Source: Euprymna scolopes (taxonomy: Eukaryota). Taken from it: DNA of 64,000 bases. Below are positions 1 through 48,228 of this stretch, piece by piece. The position numbers were made by a program, and so were the translations under genes. The stretch is from the NCBI GenBank assembly GCA_053919585.1, contig CM132819.1. One strand, 5' to 3'. Positions within the stretch are counted from its first letter, which is position 1. Every line of letters starts with the position of its first letter. The notes under the pieces are model-generated. The model had not been told where the DNA came from. It saw only the letters and a list, made by a program, of their open reading frames with translations, and searched no databases.

Positions 1-1545
1 TTTATTTATTTTTTTTTGCTTTTTTAATTCTTCATGGCTATTGCTTTAATGTCTTGAGTGATGATCAAACGACCTAAAACATAATTTTCTTGTTGATTGT
101 TGCACGTTCAAAAAAGAGAAGCGTGCAACATATTAAGGAGATAGTGATTTATATCTAACGCTGGCTCTTTTGTTAGCAAATAAGTAAAGAAAACTTACAA
201 AGAGAGTGAGAGCTATTTCTCTTAGCTGTTTTTTAAAAGATGTTTATTTAAAAATATCTCCATATTAGCAAACTGCTAAACCAGATTAAGTATTTTTAAA
301 TAAATTGTAGCAGAGGACATTATTTTGATGCGAGTGCCATGATATAGCAATAACAATTGAAACTTCGCTAAACAAAAGTTTTATTTCTAAGAATAAATGT
401 TATTTAGTTTCAAATTTTCAAATCCGGATAAGAATTTTATATTTGCTATTATCATGGAAATTATTTAGTACTTAAGGAATGAAATTAGGTTTGCCTGCGT
501 GCTGTAGATTAAATAACAGTATATATGAAACTACATACTCATATCTAACTGTTTTGTTCTACATACTAGAGAAATAGAGGGGAAAATGTCACCAAGTTAA
601 TGCCCTTCAACCATCAAAATGAGGAAAATGACAGCATTTTGTTGATCGCTGTCCTGTTTGGCTCCCTCCCACGTTGTCATATAACGGCCCTTGCAAAGCT
701 CTAAAGCGGGAAAAAATGACTTATGTTTGGCTTTTTATGTTTTTATTTTCTCTTGGTCTCTGTGAGCGTTCTGTTAGTCTGCTGCAGTCATTTATTATAT
801 TTTTTTATTGTGTTTTGCTTTTAGGTGTGTAAAATGTCAGAACGAGCCAGCGAGAAGGATCCTATTTCAAGAGGGGTTACCCTATGTTGCTTTAGATCGA
901 CTGTGTCCTACACTTCACCCCCATCTGTCCTGACTGCAAGAATGACCTTTTAGCAGGTAGGAAGGAAAAAGGTCTGCTTAGTTGGGTGATCAGGAACCGG
1001 GCGATGACAGTAATAGTGTGCCGCTTTGGGCTTTCTGCACACACACATAAATAGTATTCCCACTTAGAGAACAGTCATAAAAAACGCTGCAGACAATAAT
1101 ATCATCCTACCATGCTGAAGTCTAAATAACTTTGTAAATACTATATATATAACCCCAATTTTTACACATTGTTTGAATAATTGTGTGCGGAGGAGTTACT
1201 GTAATTAGCTGTATCTACCTGATGCAGCCCCGATACAATAAATTCGTTAGTTTTTAACTCATTTGCATATTATAAAAACCGATAGAGAAAAAGGAAGGCA
1301 ATTTGTTTGCAATAAAATACGAATAATTTCCTTTATAAATTGAAACTTTTAGGTTATACTTAAAAATGATTACCGCTATTCCTATTACATATATATATCA
1401 CTTCTAGTTTTACCTTAATTTATGGGCATGTTTATTCCCGTATATATATATATGATCGTTCAATGTATGGCAATCCTTAATTTACATACTTCTCACTATC
1501 TGTTAATTTCCTTAAATTAATGAAACAAACATTTGTGTAACTTAC

Positions 1546-1598
<53 letters not shown>

Positions 1599-1607
1599 AT
1601 ATATATG

Positions 1608-1671
1608 GCGATTAAGCTACACTGAATATTCTGCGTTTCATCCAACTATAGGATTCGTCAGGCTTATGCGC
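1608..1671 (-). ncRNA. Type I hammerhead ribozyme motif, intact catalytic core
   Basis: Minus strand reads GCGCATAAGC CTGACGA ATCC-tatagtt-GGAT GAAA CGC-agaatattca-GTG T A GCTTAATCGC. Stem I is TAAGC/GCTTA plus GCG/CGC, stem II is ATCC/GGAT and stem III is ACGC/GTGT. The cleavage triplet is GUA (1620-1618). Confidence 0.85.
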
Positions 1672-1689
1672 GAATTCTGTGGTTGCTTC

Positions 1690-1770
1690 TTGTTTTTATA
1701 TATGTTGAGGATTTCTAGTTAGCCAATCAGCTTTCTAGTATCCACCTCGCCCCTTCCTATCAGCCAATGG
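1690..1770 (-). promoter_or_regulatory. TATA plus two CCAAT boxes upstream of the hammerhead (Penelope pseudo-LTR-like promoter)
   Basis: TATATAAAAA lies on the minus strand at 1702-1693, ~22-31 nt before ribozyme stem I. AGCCAAT motifs occur at 1721-1727 and 1762-1768. Confidence 0.45.
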
Positions 1771-1893
1771 GCATGCATTTTATCAAACAAAGGATCTGTT
1801 TTAGAACTAGGTTAGTGCTTTTAGGTAGACGTTCTCTTTTTTTCCTTTTTTTTACATATAAATATACCTATGTGTACACACATACATGCACAT

Positions 1894-1946
<53 letters not shown>

Positions 1947-3585
1947 TAAAATGACCAACAAAATACGTTTCAAAACATGATATACAGAATGTAAAAATGC
2001 CTTTAAACTGAAATTTTCTTATAAAGCAACAAATATTTTGTTTATGTACATAATAAAACTCTTTACTCTCTCAGTTCACATCTATTTTTAGTGAGCCAAT
2101 AATTGTTTATGCCTTCCTGCAGTCTGTTTTAAGCAGAGCGTTTACTGTACTAAAAATCTCAGTAAATAATTATGGTTTACAAGACCATTTTACTGATGTT
2201 ATAAGTACAGGAAATACGTTAAATGTTCTAGTACTTTGATATATAGTTTTATTTTGAAGAAAAAGTTTATTCATCATTTGGCGGCTATAAATCTATCAGT
2301 AAATGTTTATTTTTGAACGTCTAACTCAGATATTTGTAATATTAATCTATTCTCATGAAAATAGTTTTCATTTAAATTACCTCCCTTGAAAATTAATGGA
2401 CATAATGTTATAAGGTTGATTTTGGTAATTAATTTTTGAATAAAATATGATGAATACAGACACCTTATATTTATATTGGAAAATAAGGCAAATAATAAAT
2501 GTATAGCGCCAAACATTATTGTGAATTATTTAATTATTTTTATGCAAATGAAACATACAAACATCTGTGTTTGGGTTTTTGATATATACTATCTATACAG
2601 TGTTTCAGGAGACTATGCAGCATTATTGATTTAAATAAGCAGTTGTCTTAATAATGGTAATATATGTGCAATAAACTTTTTAAAGATTCACATTAATTTA
2701 TTAGAACTGTCTTTAAAAAGTAATAGGAAAAACAGTATTAAAATATGACATGAAATATTTTAATGTTTATAATTAATTTTTGTTAAAACCTTATAGATAA
2801 ACAAATATCATATTACAAATTTTTTCTTTGAAAATTTCACGTAATGTATTGAGGATGGAACGGCTTTACTATTTAAAAAGCAAAATATAACAAATCTTAT
2901 TTATAAAATGTGCCGCTAAGAGATGTACTTAAAAAAAACATTGAATTATTATTTTAATTTCACTTAACTTTACCCGTTGAGAAAAATATCAAAACTATTT
3001 TCATTTTTTTTAAAGCTAAGCTCTTTGTAAGAGGAATTCCCAAAGACAAATCTTTTCCAAAATTAATTCCAAATGCCATTCTCGCTTCACAAATTACCAA
3101 AATGACAGCAAAACAAATAGGAAAAAAGGAGGTTAGGGTATTTAAGCTTTCCGTCATATAGCCAAGTTATGCAAGTCTCAAGGATTAAACAAGACTTTTT
3201 TACAGAGAATCGGAAAATGGAAAAATGAGAAACGGCATGAAATAATCTCAACTATTTCACAAACTCGTCTGCTATGTTCTTAGTTGAAATGAGTAAAAGG
3301 CAGATTGAAAATACTTAGACATAAATCGAAAAAAAAATGTTAAAAGAAAAAGGAAAATTTGCAAAATGTTTATAACTTTTGACAGACGAATCATTTAAAC
3401 AACTAAAATACAAAATGATCCATTATGTTATGCCCGGGTTTAAATCTCTTAAATGTAATACTAAGGAAGAATGTTTAATATGTAATTTATTTTATGCATA
3501 TACACATATTATAATTGATATAATAAATTCTGTGTATACTTTCCATATATTTTTCAACGGTGTTTAAGAGATTAATAGTATTATT

Positions 3586-3790: not shown

Positions 3791-4930
3791 TTCATTAATT
3801 TTTTAAGCTACACAGAGGTGTCCGTTTCATTTCGACAGATAATCCTAAGGCTAAGTACTTTAGCCGCCCCCTATAGCTTCGTTGCCATAGGTATAGTTTC
3901 TTACTAATAGTAAAATATAGGCGTGCGTCTAATTCAGCGTTTGTTTATTTGCTTTTGTTTCTTCAGTTCTAGATGCAAATCTGGGGTTAAAGCCATACGA
4001 GTTGATCGAAGTTATTTTGAAAGTGTCATTAATTAAGAGAAGAGAGGGGATAGACTGATCAGAAATTTTAGCAATTGGTGATAATTTTTAAAGAAGACGT
4101 CTGACTACACACATACCTCATCGTAAAATCAAGATGGAGCGAGCGAGAGAGATTGAAACTGAAAGAGATTAACATATGGAGAAAAGAAACATTACGAGAT
4201 GTAATCTCCAAAGATTGATTGTAAAATGGCACCACGGGAATTTTCACATGTTCCAGACTTAGCGGAATGCGGCCGATAGTGTCAGAATATGGCAATGTGA
4301 TTTAGTTATCACTACAAGACACGTAGTGGCAGCATTTTATTCTTTATTATATGGTTATTTTCCTTATTGTTCTTCTGGATAAGTTGTAAAAAAATTAGCT
4401 CTATTTCCAAGAATCAAAAATAAGATCCCTTCGGTAGGACTACACACTGGTTCTTACAAAGAATTGTGCGCCTTTTCCTAGTGATGACAACTCAAGTAAC
4501 AGCAGTAAGTTGGATCGCTCAAGAAAGGATTTACGCAGTCTTTATTTTCATTATACTGTAATATGAGTTATGTATGGGGAACTTGATATTTTATTTTACT
4601 AATGAATCATCACTTACGAAATCTAATGGATAATGAGATGGATAGTTGGTTAATTGATTGATAATGGATATGATGAGAGGATTGAAAATAGTTGGACAAA
4701 TATCATTTTGACATTAGATTTGAAATTGACTACGTAGCCTGCATGGAAGCAATCCTGTTAATCAATGAAAGAGTGCATAGAGTGGAACTTTTTATATTTT
4801 TTTTAGATTTGGCAACAATACTATCAGAGCGTACCAAACCGGGGTCAATCTCAGAGAAAAAGTCAGAGGGAAAGCCCAGATAAAAAATGAGGAAGAAGGG
4901 ATCTCAGACAAAGTATCAAGGAAGGTGAGA

Positions 4931-5720
4931 AACTCTCAAACAAATAATCGATCGGGGGGGGAGCTCAGACAAATGATCGATCGGGGGGGGAGCTCAGACA
5001 AATGATCGATCGGGGGGGGGGAGCTCAGACAAATGATCGATCGGGGGGGGAGCTCAGACAAATGATCGATCGGGGGGGGGGAGCTCAGACAAATGATCGA
5101 TCGGGGGGGGGAGCTCAGACAAATTATCGATCGGGGGGGGAGCTCAGACAAATGATCGATCGGGGGGGAGATCAGACAAATGATCGATCGGGGGGGGGAG
5201 CTCAGACAAATGATCGATCGGAGGGAGCTCAGACAAATGATCGATCGGGGGGGGAGCTCAGACAAATGATCGATCGGGGGGGAGCTCAGACAAATGATCG
5301 ATCGGGGGGGGGAGCTCAGACAAATGATCGATCGGGGGGAGCTAAGACAAATGATCGATCGGGAGGGAAGCTCAGACAAATGATCGATCGGGGGGGAAGC
5401 TCAGACAAATGATCGATCGGGGGGGAGCTCAGACAAATGATCGATCGGGGGGGAGCTCAGACAAATGATCGATCGGGGGGGGAGCTCAGACAAATGATCG
5501 ATCGGGGGGAGAGCTCAGACAAATGATCGATCGGGGGGGAGCTCAGATAAATGATCGATCGGGGGGGGACTCAGACAAATGATCGATCGGGGGAGGGAAG
5601 CTCAGACAAATGATCGATCGGGGGGAAGCTCACACAATCGATCGGAGGGGGAGGGAAGCTCAGACAATCGGGGGGGAGGGAAGCTCAGAAAAATAATCAT
5701 AAGGGGGAGAAGCTCAAACA
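4931..5720. repeat. Minisatellite, unit AGCTCAGACAAATGATCGATC + G(6-10), ~27-31 nt, ~24 good copies plus degenerate flanking copies
   Basis: The tandem array is directly visible. Units differ mainly in G-run length, and copies decay at both edges. Confidence 0.97.
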
Positions 5721-9475: not shown

Positions 9476-9744
9476 NNNNNNNNNNNNNNNNNNNNNNNNN
9501 NNNNNNNNNNNNNNNNNNNNNNNNNNNNNNNNNNNNNNNNNNNNNNNNNNNNNNNNNNNNNNNNNNNNNNNNNNNNNNNNNNNNNNNNNNNNNNNNNNNN
9601 NNNNNNNNNNNNNNNNNNNNNNNNNNNNNNNNNNNNNNNNNNNNNNNNNNNNNNNNNNNNNNNNNNNNNNNNNNNNNNNNNNNNNNNNNNNNNNNNNNNN
9701 NNNNNNNNNNNNNNNNNNNNNNNNNNNNNNNNNNNNNNNNNNNN
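9476..9744. other. Assembly gap (N run)
   Basis: Run of n. Confidence 1.
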
Positions 9745-9831
9745 AGAGGGGAGAGACAAAGGGGACAGGATTAAAGTATTTAGTATGATGTCCATTAAGT
9801 AAACAATCTTATGTTTCCCCATTTGAATCTT

Positions 9832-10143
9832 CATACAAGGCAGCTTCCTTCAGTCTTGACAAACTATGGATACCTACGGTAAAGGTACTGTAAGGATGCC
9901 TGCCTGTAAAATTTTTGTGAGAAGGTTTGCACAATCTCCAACCACACCTCCCCGAAGTCGGCGCTGTTGTATACCACTGGCAAGTGGAGGTTCAGAACGA
10001 CTGGAAACAATGCGGAGATAAACGGAGAGCACATACAGCGCCTAGAATTCCCAAATGGTCACGCATCCGGTACTCGCCAGGCTCAATGTTGCTTAACTTC
10101 GGTGATCTGACGAGAACCAGCGTATCAGTGTGATTATGCCGTA
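9832..10143 (-). mobile_element. 5S rRNA-headed SINE-like element (SINE3-type); 5S head at 10031-10143
   Basis: Minus strand reads tacggcataatcacactgatacgctggttctcgtcagatcaccgaagttaagcaacattgagcctggcgagtaccggatgcgtgaccatttgggaattctaggcgctgta, a near full-length diverged 5S rRNA. There is no oligo-T terminator, and it runs into a body shared with 50672-50838. Confidence 0.8.
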
Positions 10144-10382
10144 CATATATATGGCCTTAGCAATGTGAGCTTTATAAATCGATTTATGTTCTGATGTTTT
10201 TGGACACAGTTTTTGGAACTCGTCTTCTTAAAAATCCCGAATATATGAAGTACCTAGATTTTTTAATGTGAATAACGATATTACAGAAATCTAATTTCTC
10301 ACATTTATTAAAATATGCTCCGGTGTTAAATTAACATCTATCGAGATAAACTCTTAAAAGTTCGCCTATTCATAATATATAC

Positions 10383-13375: not shown

Positions 13376-13538
13376 ATATATATATTCCTCGAGACATAGA
13401 ATGAGGAGATGTATTGTTAATGATTACAATATTTAAAGTTATCACAAGAGGATAAAGCGCTTACTATCGATTCATTTTTAACCTAATGCTTTACAAGTGA
13501 AGCTATAAAATAAAATAAAAACAAGCGAAGGTACTTAC

Positions 13539-14205
13539 TGACACATTCCTTGCCTTCAATACCCTGGAAACCTTGTAAACATTTGCAACCACCAAACGCG
13601 ATGTCCCATGTTCCGTCACTACGGCAAAGGTACGTTGGTTTAGTCTCTTGTATAGCATTGGGCACACATTCGCCCTGTTTCTGCACCAGCGATGAGGGCC
13701 GGTCACCCGTCGGAGTCTCCATGAAAAATGCATAGTTGATGGTGATGTTCGGACATGTCACATAGTAGATACGAACCGACAGCAAAGTGATACAAGCGCC
13801 AGTGTCCTGGAAGGCAAAGTAGACACCCTTGCGCTTAATAGTGACGTGCTTGGTTTCCATGTTGACCACAACATCCGTTGGCTGCACGTAGAGGCTGTCA
13901 GCGGCGATTGTGTCGATCTTCGTGTACACGTGTGGATCCCACGTCGGCATGTGATTGTTGGCAAAGTCGGACTCTGCCTCATAATAATAGAGATTAAACG
14001 TCTCCTTGCATTGCTGTAAGCTGCTCGGGTCGTTGTGTCGGATGCATTTGCGCATCGTGAAGCTCATCTCTATGTGCAGGCTTTTGGCGTCCCCTCGGTC
14101 TATGTAGGGCGTTCGTAACCAGTTGTTTATGTCCATAAAAGTCACATAACATGATGAATAGGCCTGAACTGTCTCACCAAGGTAACTGCTACTACCAAGT
14201 AACCA
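13539..14205 (-). CDS. Eph: Eph receptor tyrosine kinase, internal exon (exon 3 equivalent): most of the ephrin ligand-binding domain plus the Sushi-like Cys-rich region
   Basis: The translation has Eph motifs NNWLRT, FTMRKC, CKETFNLYYYEA, YTKIDTIAAD, GVYFAFQDTGACITLLSVRIYYVTCP, GECVPNA and YLCRSDGTW...GGCKCLQGF. The acceptor is a pyrimidine tract then ...gctgattgcag|TGG (AG at 14207-14206). The donor is GTC A|gtaagt (13538-13533). The exon is 667 nt with phase 0 start and phase 1 end, as in exon 3 of vertebrate Eph genes. Confidence 0.97.
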
Positions 14206-14549
14206 CTGCAATCAGCAGGAATCAGTCAGCCAAGTAAAAGAGAAAAAGGAAAAATAAAAACAGATTAATAAAACATCTTTGGTTGTTAAAACTTAAAAGC
14301 ATTTATCATAAACAGTTTCTTATATTCAAAAATAATAGTAAATTAAAATAGCACTAAACTGGATAAAATGTTAGAAATAATATCCATAATTTGAGCTTTA
14401 TCATTACGAATTAAATATTTACCCGGTATTTATTTATGAAAGAAATATATATTTATTTACAGATGACCCGAATAGCCAATCGATTTTCTCCATCTCTTCG
14501 GTACATCAAACAAGGTTTCAGATTTTTTTAGGGTAAAAATTGGTAATTG

Positions 14550-45792: not shown

Positions 45793-47900
45793 CTTATCTA
45801 TTATATCCTAAGTCGGATGCTATTTTGTGGGGGACAATTAACTATTATTTGATTATTAATACATAAAATTGAACTAATTTTTATAATTGGGAATTTTTCC
45901 GAAATCTGTTTACACATTTTTTTCCATATTAATGAAATTTATAAATATGAAAATGATGTTTTTTTTTTTCAAACGCCGGAAGCCATTACCAAGTAGACTG
46001 TTTCAAGTATTGTATAAACCACCCGGTCTTTCCAAATAGTAAAAATTGAAATATGACATTTGGGTTTTGCACAGATAAGCATTTGAGAAGTGACGGATTG
46101 GAAGACATGCACCTTTGCTTATATAATATGGATGCTCGGTGTTGCCCAGGGGCGTGAACAAAATTAAAGACATAAAAATCGTGGTACCATCTTTCTTTTG
46201 AAATATCTGCCTTTACATCTTGATTGAAGAGAAAAGAGTTATTACACGTCCTAACCCAAAGGTCAAAAAAGTGTTATTTACTATAATAAAGGTTTCACTC
46301 TAGTGGTCATCAATTGTCTGAAAACTTTCTACTCTAATAGCTTATTTCCTCAAATGTCCTGTGGAAGTGTAGATGTAACGACTGCACTTCTTTGAGTGTA
46401 AATTCTTCGGACTGGACAAAAATCAGACTAAGAATAATACTTATATAAAATTCGACTAACTCTTGGAATTTAAAATTTTTTGTGATAAAAGTTCCATTAC
46501 TGTTCGAACGCACCTCGTATACACACACACACGCACACACACACGTATGAGAACACAAACACACATGTATGCATAATTATGCATGCAAAAAACATAAAAC
46601 ATGGGCATATATGAATTTAAAGATCCGAAATCATCCTTCTTTAAAAGATGTGGATATGAAAAAGTTCAAGATGTTGAGGAATAACCTGCATTCCTATCAA
46701 CTGAAAATAGGAGTTTGAAAGAGACCCTAATTACCATGGTAACAAAAAAAAAAGAAGAAAACAGATAAAGAAAACGAGTTGATAGAAAGAGATGCTGCCT
46801 CATCACAAAGACATTGAAACTCGACTCGTATTCTAACGTTTATCATGGCGGAACATTGCTGCAAGACTTTGATGCAATGCTCTAAAAAAGGAAATCACTA
46901 AGGTTGAAGAACTAATTCATCAAATCAAAATTATTGCGATTGTGCAGAGAGAATGGTAAGGCATAAATCAGCACATTTATATACATACATACACACACAC
47001 ACACGGGGGGATTATGTAAAAAAAAAAAAAATCAAAACATTTGAGTTTTAACAATAGAATCAAAATTGACCATGAGCATTCTGATAAATGAATATTTAAA
47101 ATATATTAATATAAAATATTTTGTTTTGCTTCATTTTACGGCATGCCGACCAGAAACATTTTTTAATCACAAATAGCATATTGGATAAGACCCTGTGGGA
47201 GGGATTAATTAAAAAAAAAACATTATTTTAAGATAGTTAACGTTAATTTTTCTTGCATAGTCTTATTAAAATTTAAGTCCTTGTTTATTCATTCTATCAG
47301 CCAATTGACAGCTATTTAATTCCGGGTCCAGTTATAGTTATACTTTCTTTTCAATTATGTAATTATCGAGTTTTCTTCTATTGTTCATCTAGGATGAGTC
47401 TTCTCTTGCTGTTCATACCATATTTATACCCTGCTCTTCTCATAAAATATTCTATTTAATTCTGTTAGTGGAAGTAGATTCTATTTCATAACAGATGGGA
47501 TCCTGACAGATTCTACCATTCTAGACAGTATTTCTTAGACCAAACATGTTCCATTCATTACAACCGCATTGCCAATTTTTTATGAAATATTTAGGGGCTC
47601 AACACGGTGTATAATCAATTGATTTAGGCAAACATTTTATTCTCTAGCAAGTGCTCATTATCCTTTGGAAAGAAAAGTTTGCCCTTGACTTTATACACAT
47701 TGAGTTCTTTATAAATGCATTATTCGGTATATTTTTATATCTCGATATGATTGGATATTAAATCAGGATTTCTCTTATGATTAAAGTTGAAATTAAACTT
47801 CAATATAAGTCCTGTATAATTACACACATATACACAAAACATATCCCAGCATCAGAGTAGAAGCCAGAAAGGAAAAACAAACAAGAAATAAAAGGAAATT

Positions 47901-48121
47901 NNNNNNNNNNNNNNNNNNNNNNNNNNNNNNNNNNNNNNNNNNNNNNNNNNNNNNNNNNNNNNNNNNNNNNNNNNNNNNNNNNNNNNNNNNNNNNNNNNNN
48001 NNNNNNNNNNNNNNNNNNNNNNNNNNNNNNNNNNNNNNNNNNNNNNNNNNNNNNNNNNNNNNNNNNNNNNNNNNNNNNNNNNNNNNNNNNNNNNNNNNNN
48101 NNNNNNNNNNNNNNNNNNNNN
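47901..48121. other. Assembly gap (N run)
   Basis: Run of n. Confidence 1.
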
Positions 48122-48228
48122 AATTTATGGACGCGTAATTTACATTGAATTAAGTTTTGATTTACCTTAATTATAACAAAAGTTGCATCAATGTTCATGG
48201 CATCTGCATCATCACATGTGCCGTGTGG

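What the first reader, a model, noticed from the sequence alone, without database searches (positions are those of the whole stretch)
1608..1671. Intact hammerhead ribozyme in an Eph receptor intron, sense to the pre-mRNA
Seen: every conserved core nucleotide (C3 U4 G5 A6 N7 G8 A9, G12 A13 A14 A15.1, U16.1 H17) is present and all three helices can form, with predicted cleavage between 1618 and 1617. Stem III includes the palindrome GAATATTC, and the 10.1-11.1 pair is A-U rather than the usual G-C. Known: type I hammerheads with palindromic stem III occur in Penelope-like elements and retrozymes and can cleave as dimers, and conserved intronic hammerheads exist in amniote genes. Inference: if the Eph transcript continues past position 1, this motif is transcribed in intron 3. 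It could cut the nascent RNA and affect co-transcriptional splicing or yield truncated ectodomain-only transcripts.
Basis: partly seen in the sequence, partly recalled or inferred. Interest (0 to 1): 0.85.

Follow-up and report, generated by a model that had tools for sequence, protein, structure and literature searches.

The report
Hammerhead motif of a Penelope retrotransposon fragment
The hammerhead-ribozyme motif in this Eph-receptor intron is really there, but it is one of more than 5,000 identical copies carried in the tail of a young Penelope-like jumping gene, so it is a passenger and not a ribozyme recruited by the Eph gene.

Summary
On the minus strand, 1671-1608 reads as a complete type I hammerhead: all core bases are present, three helices form, A10.1-U11.1 replaces G-C, and cleavage is predicted between 1618 and 1617. 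The site lies inside an Eph receptor gene, in sense orientation. The ligand-binding exon is at 13483-14211(-), and a juxtamembrane exon lies about 83 kb beyond position 1 on the same strand.

The motif is not a gene-specific element. Window ~1942-1598(-) is a 5'-truncated copy of the 3' region of a Penelope-like retrotransposon (PLE) with a reverse transcriptase and GIY-YIG endonuclease ORF. The exact 51-nt hammerhead occurs 5,251 times in this 5.9-Gb mollusc genome. Copies show the PLE hallmarks: 5' truncation, an inverted copy at the 5' end, and (TA)n targets.

Sister subfamilies keep the fold, with one compensatory change in stem II, so the master elements appear to maintain it. Rfam's Hammerhead_1 model does not detect it, and cleavage is untested.

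PLE hammerheads are a known kind. Other agents of this scan reported similar hammerhead/Penelope elements elsewhere in this genome.

Of some interest at family level:
- The motif starts at the predicted start site of a TATA/CCAAT promoter.
- Thousands of head-to-head junctions map there, and about 300 map at the cleavage site.

The parts
1608..1671 (-). Type I hammerhead motif. The complete core is present, stems I, II and III form, and A10.1-U11.1 replaces G-C. Predicted cleavage is between A17 (1618) and G1.1 (1617). Position 1671 corresponds to q174, the predicted transcript start of the element's own promoter.
   Evidence: Sequence. Minimum-energy fold. Descriptor scan. Identical to the commonest family variant. 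No Rfam hit.
1598..1942 (-). 5'-truncated copy of the 3' untranslated region (pseudo-LTR region) of a Penelope-like retrotransposon. It breaks off upstream inside the element's internal (TA)n/(TG)n microsatellite (about 1892-1942). It ends downstream at q247, so it lacks q248-371, including the AATAAA signal.
   Evidence: blastn against longer copies. 98.4% identity over 246 nt to L002/L041.
1693..1702 (-). TATA box (TATATAAAAA, q143-152). Its first T lies 31 nt upstream of q174.
   Evidence: Sequence. Function is inferred only.
1721..1770 (-). Two inverted CCAAT boxes (ATTGG at about q77 and q118; they read as AGCCAAT on the + strand) upstream of the TATA box.
   Evidence: Sequence. Function is inferred only.
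1540..1597 (.). (CT)n(TA)n microsatellite abutting the 3' end of the insertion. This is the (TA)n target context typical of the family.
   Evidence: Sequence. Other copies are also followed by (TA)n.
13483..14211 (-). Eph receptor exon encoding the ligand-binding domain and the start of the cysteine-rich domain. It fixes the host gene's strand.
   Evidence: Pfam Ephrin_lbd E 1.6e-46 and Ephrin_CRD E 3.1e-17. A downstream EphA2_TM exon lies at C37:21864752-21864829(-).

Best explanation
Window ~1942-1598(-) is a recent, heavily 5'-truncated insertion of an endonuclease-bearing Penelope-like retrotransposon (PLE). It landed in a (TA)n tract inside a long Eph receptor intron, in sense orientation. 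The hammerhead is a standard part of that element's 3' region.

In complete copies the layout is as follows (q numbering = L041:2484-2856, where window position = 1845 - q):
- the ORF stop;
- a microsatellite;
- two inverted CCAAT boxes;
- a TATA box at q143;
- the hammerhead at q174-241;
- an alternative 3' end at q260;
- AATAAA at q349;
- the element's end at q371.

Proposed mechanism (inferred):
- RNA polymerase II starts about 31 nt after the TATA box, at q174-176, so the hammerhead is the first thing transcribed.
- If the hammerhead cleaves, it removes the capped 54-nt leader and leaves a 5'-OH RNA starting at G1.1.
- PLE reverse transcriptase copies these RNAs by target-primed synthesis into (TA)n. 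This gives 5'-truncated copies and head-to-head pairs.

For the Eph gene the copy is a passenger. At most it is one of thousands of potential weak intronic cleavage or promoter sites.
For: Copy number and age:
- 710 first-look matches, of which the 42 scored are 96-100% identical.
- 5,251 exact copies of the 51-nt motif, against 0 for the reversed control.

PLE identity:
- In longer copies the region lies directly downstream of an ORF. The ORF's C-terminus hits GIY-YIG (E 4.7e-4, just under the Pfam cut-off).
- Open frames reach 689 aa and carry the reverse-transcriptase motifs FDIxDFYPSI and YRDDG.
- There are 1,090 homologues at up to E 1e-186.
- The nearest Atlas clusters carry HTH_animal, DUF8422, GIY-YIG and RVT_1 and come from Mollusca and Arthropoda.

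Insertion scars match those described for PLEs in PMC8557442:
- variable 5' truncation with a fixed 3' end;
- an inverted 5'-truncated copy adjacent at the 5' end;
- (TA)n flanks.

Conservation of the fold across subfamilies:
- 90.8% of cells are paired, against 28-43% when the partners are slid.
- The third stem II pair (10.3-11.3) switches C-G to U-A (11 versus 9 sequences).
- Stem III changes G.U to A-U and A/A to G.U.

RNA ends recorded in genomic copies:
- 5,319 head-to-head junctions are centred at q174-177, 31-33 nt after the TATA box.
- 394 junctions lie in the window around the cleavage site, and 39 of the 50 listed sit exactly on AGCU (A17-U1.3).
- Only 80 are centred in stem III, which holds the longer palindrome GAAUAUUC.

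The minimum-energy and centroid folds of the q174-371 RNA both contain the hammerhead.

The family is abundant in contigs of polyA RNA-seq runs.
Against: - No cleavage has been shown.
- Rfam Hammerhead_1 gives no hit.
- A-U at 10.1-11.1 replaces the nearly universal G-C. From memory of mutational studies, this lowers activity.
- Most retrotransposed copies retain q174-227, so most templates were uncleaved.
- The junction at the cleavage site also coincides with the 4-nt palindrome AGCT. Junctions occur at other palindromes too. So this junction does not prove cleavage.
- A scan of solo truncated copies flanked by AT-only sequence showed no spike at G1.1.
- The covariation rests on very few independent events.
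- The subfamily copies were ascertained on an exact stem III string.
- Pfam did not recognise RVT_1 in the ORF.
- The promoter and start site are inferred from sequence and junction positions only.
Confidence: 0.85

Rival explanations
1. Exapted intronic ribozyme. On this reading the Eph gene uses this hammerhead to cleave nascent pre-mRNA and so tune splicing or make truncated ectodomain transcripts, as proposed for the amniote RECK, CTCL and DTNB hammerheads.
For: - The motif is intronic and in sense orientation, and it is intact.
- The intron is very long, so even slow cleavage would precede synthesis of the 3' splice site (inference).
- Unique sequence just downstream on the minus strand (676-1428) appears in polyA RNA contigs, while 1916-2290 does not.
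Against: - The copy is 98% identical to thousands of others and shows no sign of locus-specific conservation.
- In intronic context the minimum-energy fold is not the hammerhead.
- Contigs cannot show RNA ends or strand.
- A 2026 preprint (10.64898/2026.07.22.740005) reports that related retrozymes in vertebrates are depleted from introns. That argues such insertions are tolerated or selected against, not recruited.
Confidence: 0.04
2. Hammerhead-shaped but catalytically dead or very weak element. On this reading the fold is kept in the PLE tail for another reason, such as recognition by the reverse transcriptase or a structure at the RNA 5' end, and it does not self-cleave appreciably.
For: - A10.1-U11.1 replaces G-C.
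- There is no Rfam hit, although canonical hammerheads in the same genome score above 50 bits.
- About 4,700 junction copies keep the whole uncleaved motif, against about 300 at the cleavage site.
- Solo truncated copies show no spike at G1.1.
Against: - Every core base needed for catalysis is present and is invariant across subfamilies. Loop bases and the N7 position vary.
- Helices II and III change in a pair-preserving way.
- About 300 head-to-head junctions fall exactly at the predicted scissile site. That is more than at a longer palindrome 10 nt away.
Confidence: 0.25
3. Non-LTR retrozyme. On this reading the copy belongs to a non-autonomous tandem hammerhead repeat that spreads through a small circular RNA, and is not a fragment of an autonomous PLE.
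For: - The genome holds tandem hammerhead arrays of 410-bp period elsewhere.
- Short 283-bp ORF-less forms of this family are the majority.
Against: - This family's copies are single or head-to-head, not head-to-tail.
- The sequence is continuous with the 3' UTR of the PLE ORF.
- The window copy has a single hammerhead, so no unit-length RNA could be excised.
Confidence: 0.07
4. Chance resemblance in AT-rich intronic DNA.
For: - The fold energy is not better than that of shuffles.
- The descriptor matches about 0.7% of simulated 64-kb windows, which amounts to hundreds of chance hits per 5.9-Gb genome.
Against: - The motif is a fixed part of a retroelement class known to carry hammerheads.
- It is conserved with pair-preserving changes across subfamilies.
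Confidence: 0.01

Closest known systems
Hammerhead motifs of Penelope-like elements (Cervera and de la Pena 2014, as summarised in PMC6155905 and PMC7229834; PLE structure in PMC8557442)
   Same: - A type I hammerhead located in the repeated 3'/pseudo-LTR region of an element with reverse transcriptase and GIY-YIG endonuclease.
- 5' truncation, an inverted upstream copy, and insertion into (TA)n.
- A palindrome in helix III that would allow dimer formation.
   Different: - Published PLE hammerheads are described as mostly minimal, lacking helix III and loop-loop contacts (PMC6155905). This one has a 4+2-bp helix III, a 4-bp helix II with a 7-nt loop, and an internal loop in helix I.
- It has A-U at 10.1-11.1.
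- It escapes Rfam Hammerhead_1.
- It begins at the predicted start site of a TATA/CCAAT promoter.
Metazoan non-LTR retrozymes (PMC7229834; bioRxiv 10.64898/2026.07.22.740005)
   Same: - Short, AT-rich elements without an ORF that carry type I hammerheads.
- Thought to be moved by PLE enzymes.
- Thousands of copies in molluscs.
   Different: - Retrozymes are head-to-tail tandem repeats of 170-400 bp that give circular RNAs.
- This family's short forms are head-to-head palindromes of about 283 bp.
- The window copy is a single fragment.
- No circular RNA was examined.
Conserved intronic hammerheads of amniotes (RECK, CTCL, DTNB; Rfam HH9/HH10; PMC6155905)
   Same: A type I hammerhead in an intron, sense to the host gene, probably derived from a retroelement.
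   Different: - The amniote hammerheads are single-copy and conserved at orthologous sites over very long times.
- This one is a 98%-identical copy of a family with more than 5,000 identical members, and there is no evidence of orthologous conservation.
Schistosoma Sm-alpha and other hammerhead-tailed SINEs
   Same: A repeat-borne type I hammerhead with an internal loop in helix I.
   Different: - Sm-alpha has a tRNA-like Pol III head.
- This element instead has Pol II-type CCAAT and TATA boxes and is continuous with an autonomous PLE.

Membership tests
Hammerhead ribozyme, type I | Conserved core: C3 U4 G5 A6 N7 G8 A9, G12 A13 A14, A15.1-U16.1, H17 | tested here: met
   Read directly on the minus strand. 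The core columns are invariant in 20 copies from several subfamilies, except N7.
Hammerhead ribozyme, type I | Three helices around the core, with helix I open and helices II and III capped | tested here: met
   - The minimum-energy fold gives this structure.
- 90.8% of cells are paired, against 28-43% for slid controls.
- There is one compensatory pair in helix II.
Hammerhead ribozyme, type I | G10.1-C11.1 pair closing helix II (near-universal) | tested here: not met
   A-U in all 20 sequences compared.
Hammerhead ribozyme, type I | Match to the Rfam Hammerhead_1 (RF00163) covariance model | tested here: not met
   - No hit at gathering score or at E<=10 on 201 nt.
- The model has 45 positions and finds other hammerheads in this genome at 42-57 bits.
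- The long helix III and loop II here probably cost the score.
Hammerhead ribozyme, type I | Site-specific, Mg2+-dependent self-cleavage 3' of H17 | not testable with these tools
   - There is only indirect evidence: about 300 head-to-head cDNA junctions at A17-U1.3.
- That evidence is confounded by the AGCT palindrome.
- The RNA data were contigs only.
Penelope-like element (endonuclease-bearing) | Single ORF with reverse transcriptase plus GIY-YIG endonuclease | tested here: inconclusive
   - GIY-YIG hit at E 4.7e-4, 20.8 bits against a cut-off of 22.6.
- RVT_1 was not recognised by Pfam.
- Reverse-transcriptase motifs are visible by eye.
- Homologous clusters carry RVT_1, GIY-YIG and HTH_animal.
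Penelope-like element (endonuclease-bearing) | 5'-truncated insertions, an inverted 5'-truncated copy at the 5' end, and microsatellite targets | tested here: met
   The criteria are taken from PMC8557442.
Penelope-like element (endonuclease-bearing) | Hammerhead motif in the repeated terminal region | tested here: met
   The motif lies 170-240 nt into the 3' region that follows the ORF.
Non-LTR retrozyme | Head-to-tail tandem units of 170-400 bp, each with a hammerhead, giving unit-length circular RNA | tested here: not met
   - There is one copy in the window.
- Family copies are single or head-to-head.
- Circular RNA was not tested.
Exapted intronic hammerhead (amniote HH9/HH10 type) | Single or low copy number, conserved at an orthologous intronic site | tested here: not met
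   - 5,251 exact copies.
- No Rfam HH9/HH10 hit.
- Orthologous conservation could not be tested, because no related genomes were available.

The most novel reading that the evidence does not exclude
In this PLE family the hammerhead is built into the very 5' end of a Pol II transcript (TATA box at -31). On this reading, self-cleavage decaps the RNA and produces a 5'-OH template. The genome would then keep a fossil record of both RNA ends: about 4,700 head-to-head junctions at the start site and about 300 at the scissile bond. If that is right, thousands of sense-oriented intronic copies, including this one in the Eph gene, are small promoter-plus-ribozyme modules. Each could both cut the host pre-mRNA and launch its own transcript into the downstream intron. 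Coverage of 676-1428 in polyA RNA contigs, with none at 1916-2290, hints at the second effect.
Probability: 0.12. Interest if true: 0.6.

Novelty: new member of a known kind. Interest (0 to 1): 0.3.

Why it matters
For the Eph gene it matters little. The motif is a recent transposon passenger, not a conserved regulatory ribozyme.

For transposon biology the family is a useful case, because the role of hammerheads in Penelope-like elements is still unknown. Here a fuller-than-minimal hammerhead sits at the predicted start of the element's own transcript. Thousands of genomic junctions also mark where the templates began. That makes a concrete question testable: does the ribozyme decap or trim the RNA before reverse transcription?

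It also shows that Rfam-based screens miss an abundant natural hammerhead variant with A-U at 10.1-11.1.

Tried and rejected
- Rfam scans at gathering score and at E<=10 gave no hammerhead. I do not read this as evidence against the motif, because the model is short.
- An 832-aa open frame on C17, taken as a possible full-length ORF, turned out to be a translated microsatellite.
- Pfam did not recognise the reverse transcriptase, and the PDB sequence search gave nothing. The PLE assignment therefore rests on GIY-YIG, homologous clusters and insertion architecture.
- RNA evidence for cleavage could not be obtained. Only assembled contigs were available, and they cannot show ends or strand. Two contigs that end at 1617 are one base off the expected 5'-fragment end and are probably assembly-graph breaks.
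- I first took the repeat for a 248-bp SINE-like unit. I rejected this once longer copies showed continuity with the ORF and with q248-371.
- I tested whether copies begin at the cleavage site. Head-to-head junctions do so. The control at the GAATATTC palindrome also gives junctions. A scan of solo truncated copies shows no spike at G1.1. So this is suggestive only.
- The hammerhead-like tail at about 3810-3860(-) has a broken core (CUUAGGA in place of CUGANGA) and is not detected by blastn. I treat it as an old degenerate relative.
- After no more genome sequence could be fetched, so truncation points could not be tabulated on a larger sample.

Full report
**1. Observation**

The minus strand of 1671-1608 reads as follows.
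- Stem I, 5' strand: GCG-CA-UAAGC.
- Core: CUGACGA.
- Stem II: AUCC, loop UAUAGUU, GGAU.
- GAAA.
- Stem III: CGC-A-GA-AUAU-UC-A-GUG-U.
- A17, then GCUUA-AU-CGC.

Every core base of a hammerhead is present. Helix I is open, so this is the type I topology. The 10.1-11.1 pair is A-U, and the scissile bond is between 1618 and 1617.

ViennaRNA gives exactly this three-way junction as the minimum-energy and centroid fold of 1680-1600, but the energy is ordinary (z = -0.39). My descriptor scan of both strands of the window finds this site only. It finds hits in 2 of 300 composition-matched simulated windows. That is rare per window, but it implies hundreds of chance hits in a genome of this size.

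Rfam reports no hammerhead here, either at gathering score or at E<=10 on 201 nt. The 45-position Hammerhead_1 model nevertheless finds many sites at 42-57 bits elsewhere in the genome, including 410-bp tandem arrays.

**2. Host gene**

ORF 13483-14211(-) matches Ephrin_lbd (E 1.6e-46) and Ephrin_CRD. The only strong EphA2_TM match on this contig is at C37:21864752-21864829(-), about 83 kb beyond window position 1. The motif therefore lies within the gene body, in an intron, sense to the gene. I did not determine the intron number.

**3. What the motif belongs to**

A search of the 5.9-Gb genome with 1590-1800(-) gave 710 first-look candidates. The 42 that were scored are 96-100% identical. 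The exact 51-nt hammerhead occurs 5,251 times, with 0 for the reversed control.

Comparing copies shows a shared 3' region of about 371 nt. I number it q1-371 on L041:2484-2856, where window position = 1845 - q.

In longer copies this region follows the end of an ORF.
- The last 123 residues hit GIY-YIG weakly (E 4.7e-4).
- They have about 50,000 first-look matches in the genome.
- Open frames of 582-689 aa carry reverse-transcriptase motifs.
- There are 1,090 homologues at up to E 1e-186.
- The nearest Atlas clusters combine HTH_animal, DUF8422, GIY-YIG and RVT_1 and come from molluscs and arthropods.

Pfam itself did not recognise RVT_1.

The insertion architecture matches that described for Penelope-like elements in PMC8557442:
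- variable 5' truncation with a fixed 3' end;
- an inverted 5'-truncated copy adjacent at the 5' end (L058 and L060; many loci);
- flanking (TA)n.

The window copy aligns to this 3' region from about 1942 to 1598. It is truncated inside the element's internal microsatellite, and it lacks q248-371. It is the only copy in the window.

**4. Is the hammerhead maintained?**

Young copies are too similar to be informative. Related subfamilies, found with a stem III variant as bait and read in context, keep the whole core. They change the helices in pair-preserving ways.
- Stem II is AUCC/GGAU in some and AUUCU/AGAAU in others. This is a C-G to U-A double change, seen in 11 versus 9 sequences.
- Stem III changes G.U to A-U, and the A/A mismatch becomes G.U.
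- Over 19 pairs, 90.8% of cells are paired, against 28-43% when the partners are slid.

These are few independent events, and the bait fixed stem III. Even so, the result fits selection on the fold in the master elements.

**5. Anatomy and likely mechanism**

Upstream of the motif are two inverted CCAAT boxes (q77, q118) and TATATAAAAA at q143-152. The hammerhead's helix I begins at q174, 31 nt after the first T of the TATA box. AATAAA lies at q349, 17 nt before the element's end at q371. An alternative end lies at q260.

The minimum-energy and centroid folds of the q174-371 RNA both contain the hammerhead. A 281-nt intronic context around the window copy folds otherwise.

Genomic copies record where the templates began.
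- Head-to-head junctions centred on GCGC at q174-177 occur at 5,319 sites, about 88% of them with the same geometry.
- Junctions in a 0-14-nt window around the scissile site occur at 394 sites. Of the 50 listed, 39 lie exactly on AGCU (A17-U1.3).
- Junctions around the longer stem III palindrome occur at only 80 sites.

I infer a start site at q174-176 and a minority of templates that began at the cleavage site.

This is not proof, for three reasons. All three junction classes sit on palindromes. Solo truncated copies with AT-only flanks show no spike at G1.1. Most copies also retain the uncleaved 5' part, so cleavage is either slow or cleaved RNAs are poor templates.

**6. RNA data**

Only assembled contigs of public runs were available.
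- The family is abundant in polyA libraries labelled mollusc or invertebrate.
- Unique sequence at 676-1428, downstream of the element on the minus strand, is covered in two polyA runs, whereas 1916-2290 is not.
- That pattern would fit read-out from the fragment's promoter, which has lost its own AATAAA.
- However, contigs show neither strand nor ends, and the tool warns that holes prove nothing.

**7. Comparison with what is known**

Hammerheads in PLE terminal repeats are established (PMC6155905 and PMC7229834). They are usually described as minimal. This one has full helices II and III, an internal loop in helix I and A-U at 10.1-11.1.

It is not a retrozyme in the strict sense, because there are no head-to-tail units. 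It is also not an amniote-type exapted intronic hammerhead, because its copy number is in the thousands.

Other agents of this scan reported hammerhead elements inserted Penelope-style into (TA)n elsewhere in this genome. I reached the same reading independently for this family.

**8. Verdict**

The motif is a passenger copy of a known kind of element. The family has some features worth a specialist's attention: a hammerhead at the predicted transcript start, abundant palindromic twin-hammerhead mini-copies, and invisibility to Rfam.

Noticed in passing
genome-wide; examples L087-L092 (C1:28634525-28635638 and others): The commonest form of this family is a palindrome of about 283 bp. Two hammerhead-bearing arms are joined head to head at GCGC (q174-177). 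One arm ends at q260 and the other at q371. The junction string occurs at 5,319 sites.
   Followed up: partly
window 676-1428 versus 1916-2290: Unique intronic sequence just downstream of the PLE fragment (minus strand) is present in polyA RNA-seq contigs of two runs. The upstream side is not. This could be read-out from the fragment's TATA promoter, an unannotated transcript, or patchy assembly.
   Followed up: no
window 10030-10146 (-): A full-length 5S rRNA match (58.7 bits, E 9.6e-10) sits inside the Eph intron. It could be a 5S pseudogene or a 5S-derived repeat.
   Followed up: no
window ~3810-3860 (-): A degenerate relative of the same hammerhead tail (...AUGAAACGG...UGUGUAGCUUAA) with a broken core, followed by a (TG)n(TA)n tract. 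It is probably an old copy of a related PLE family.
   Followed up: partly
G000:C8:10432194-10435515 (L035-L040): A tandem array of canonical Rfam Hammerhead_1 motifs (53 bits each) with a 410-bp period. Each unit is preceded by (TA)n. This looks like a retrozyme-type family distinct from the one in the window.
   Followed up: no
window 2292-2479: Another repeat present in RNA contigs, with unrelated sequence on both sides in the contigs (loose ends at about 2360 and 2398).
   Followed up: no
window 4936-5412: A minisatellite that gives long repetitive open frames on both strands (PRSIICLSSPP and DRSGGGAQTN units).
   Followed up: no
window ~9500-9750 and ~47900-48130: Runs of N (assembly gaps or masked stretches) that appear as X runs in ORF translations. 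I left them untouched.
   Followed up: no
window 1617 (contig ends): Two RNA-run contigs (X3 record 20 and X8 record 27) both end at 1617, which is G1.1. That is one base past the expected end of a 5' cleavage fragment. It is probably an assembly-graph break, but raw reads would settle it.
   Followed up: no
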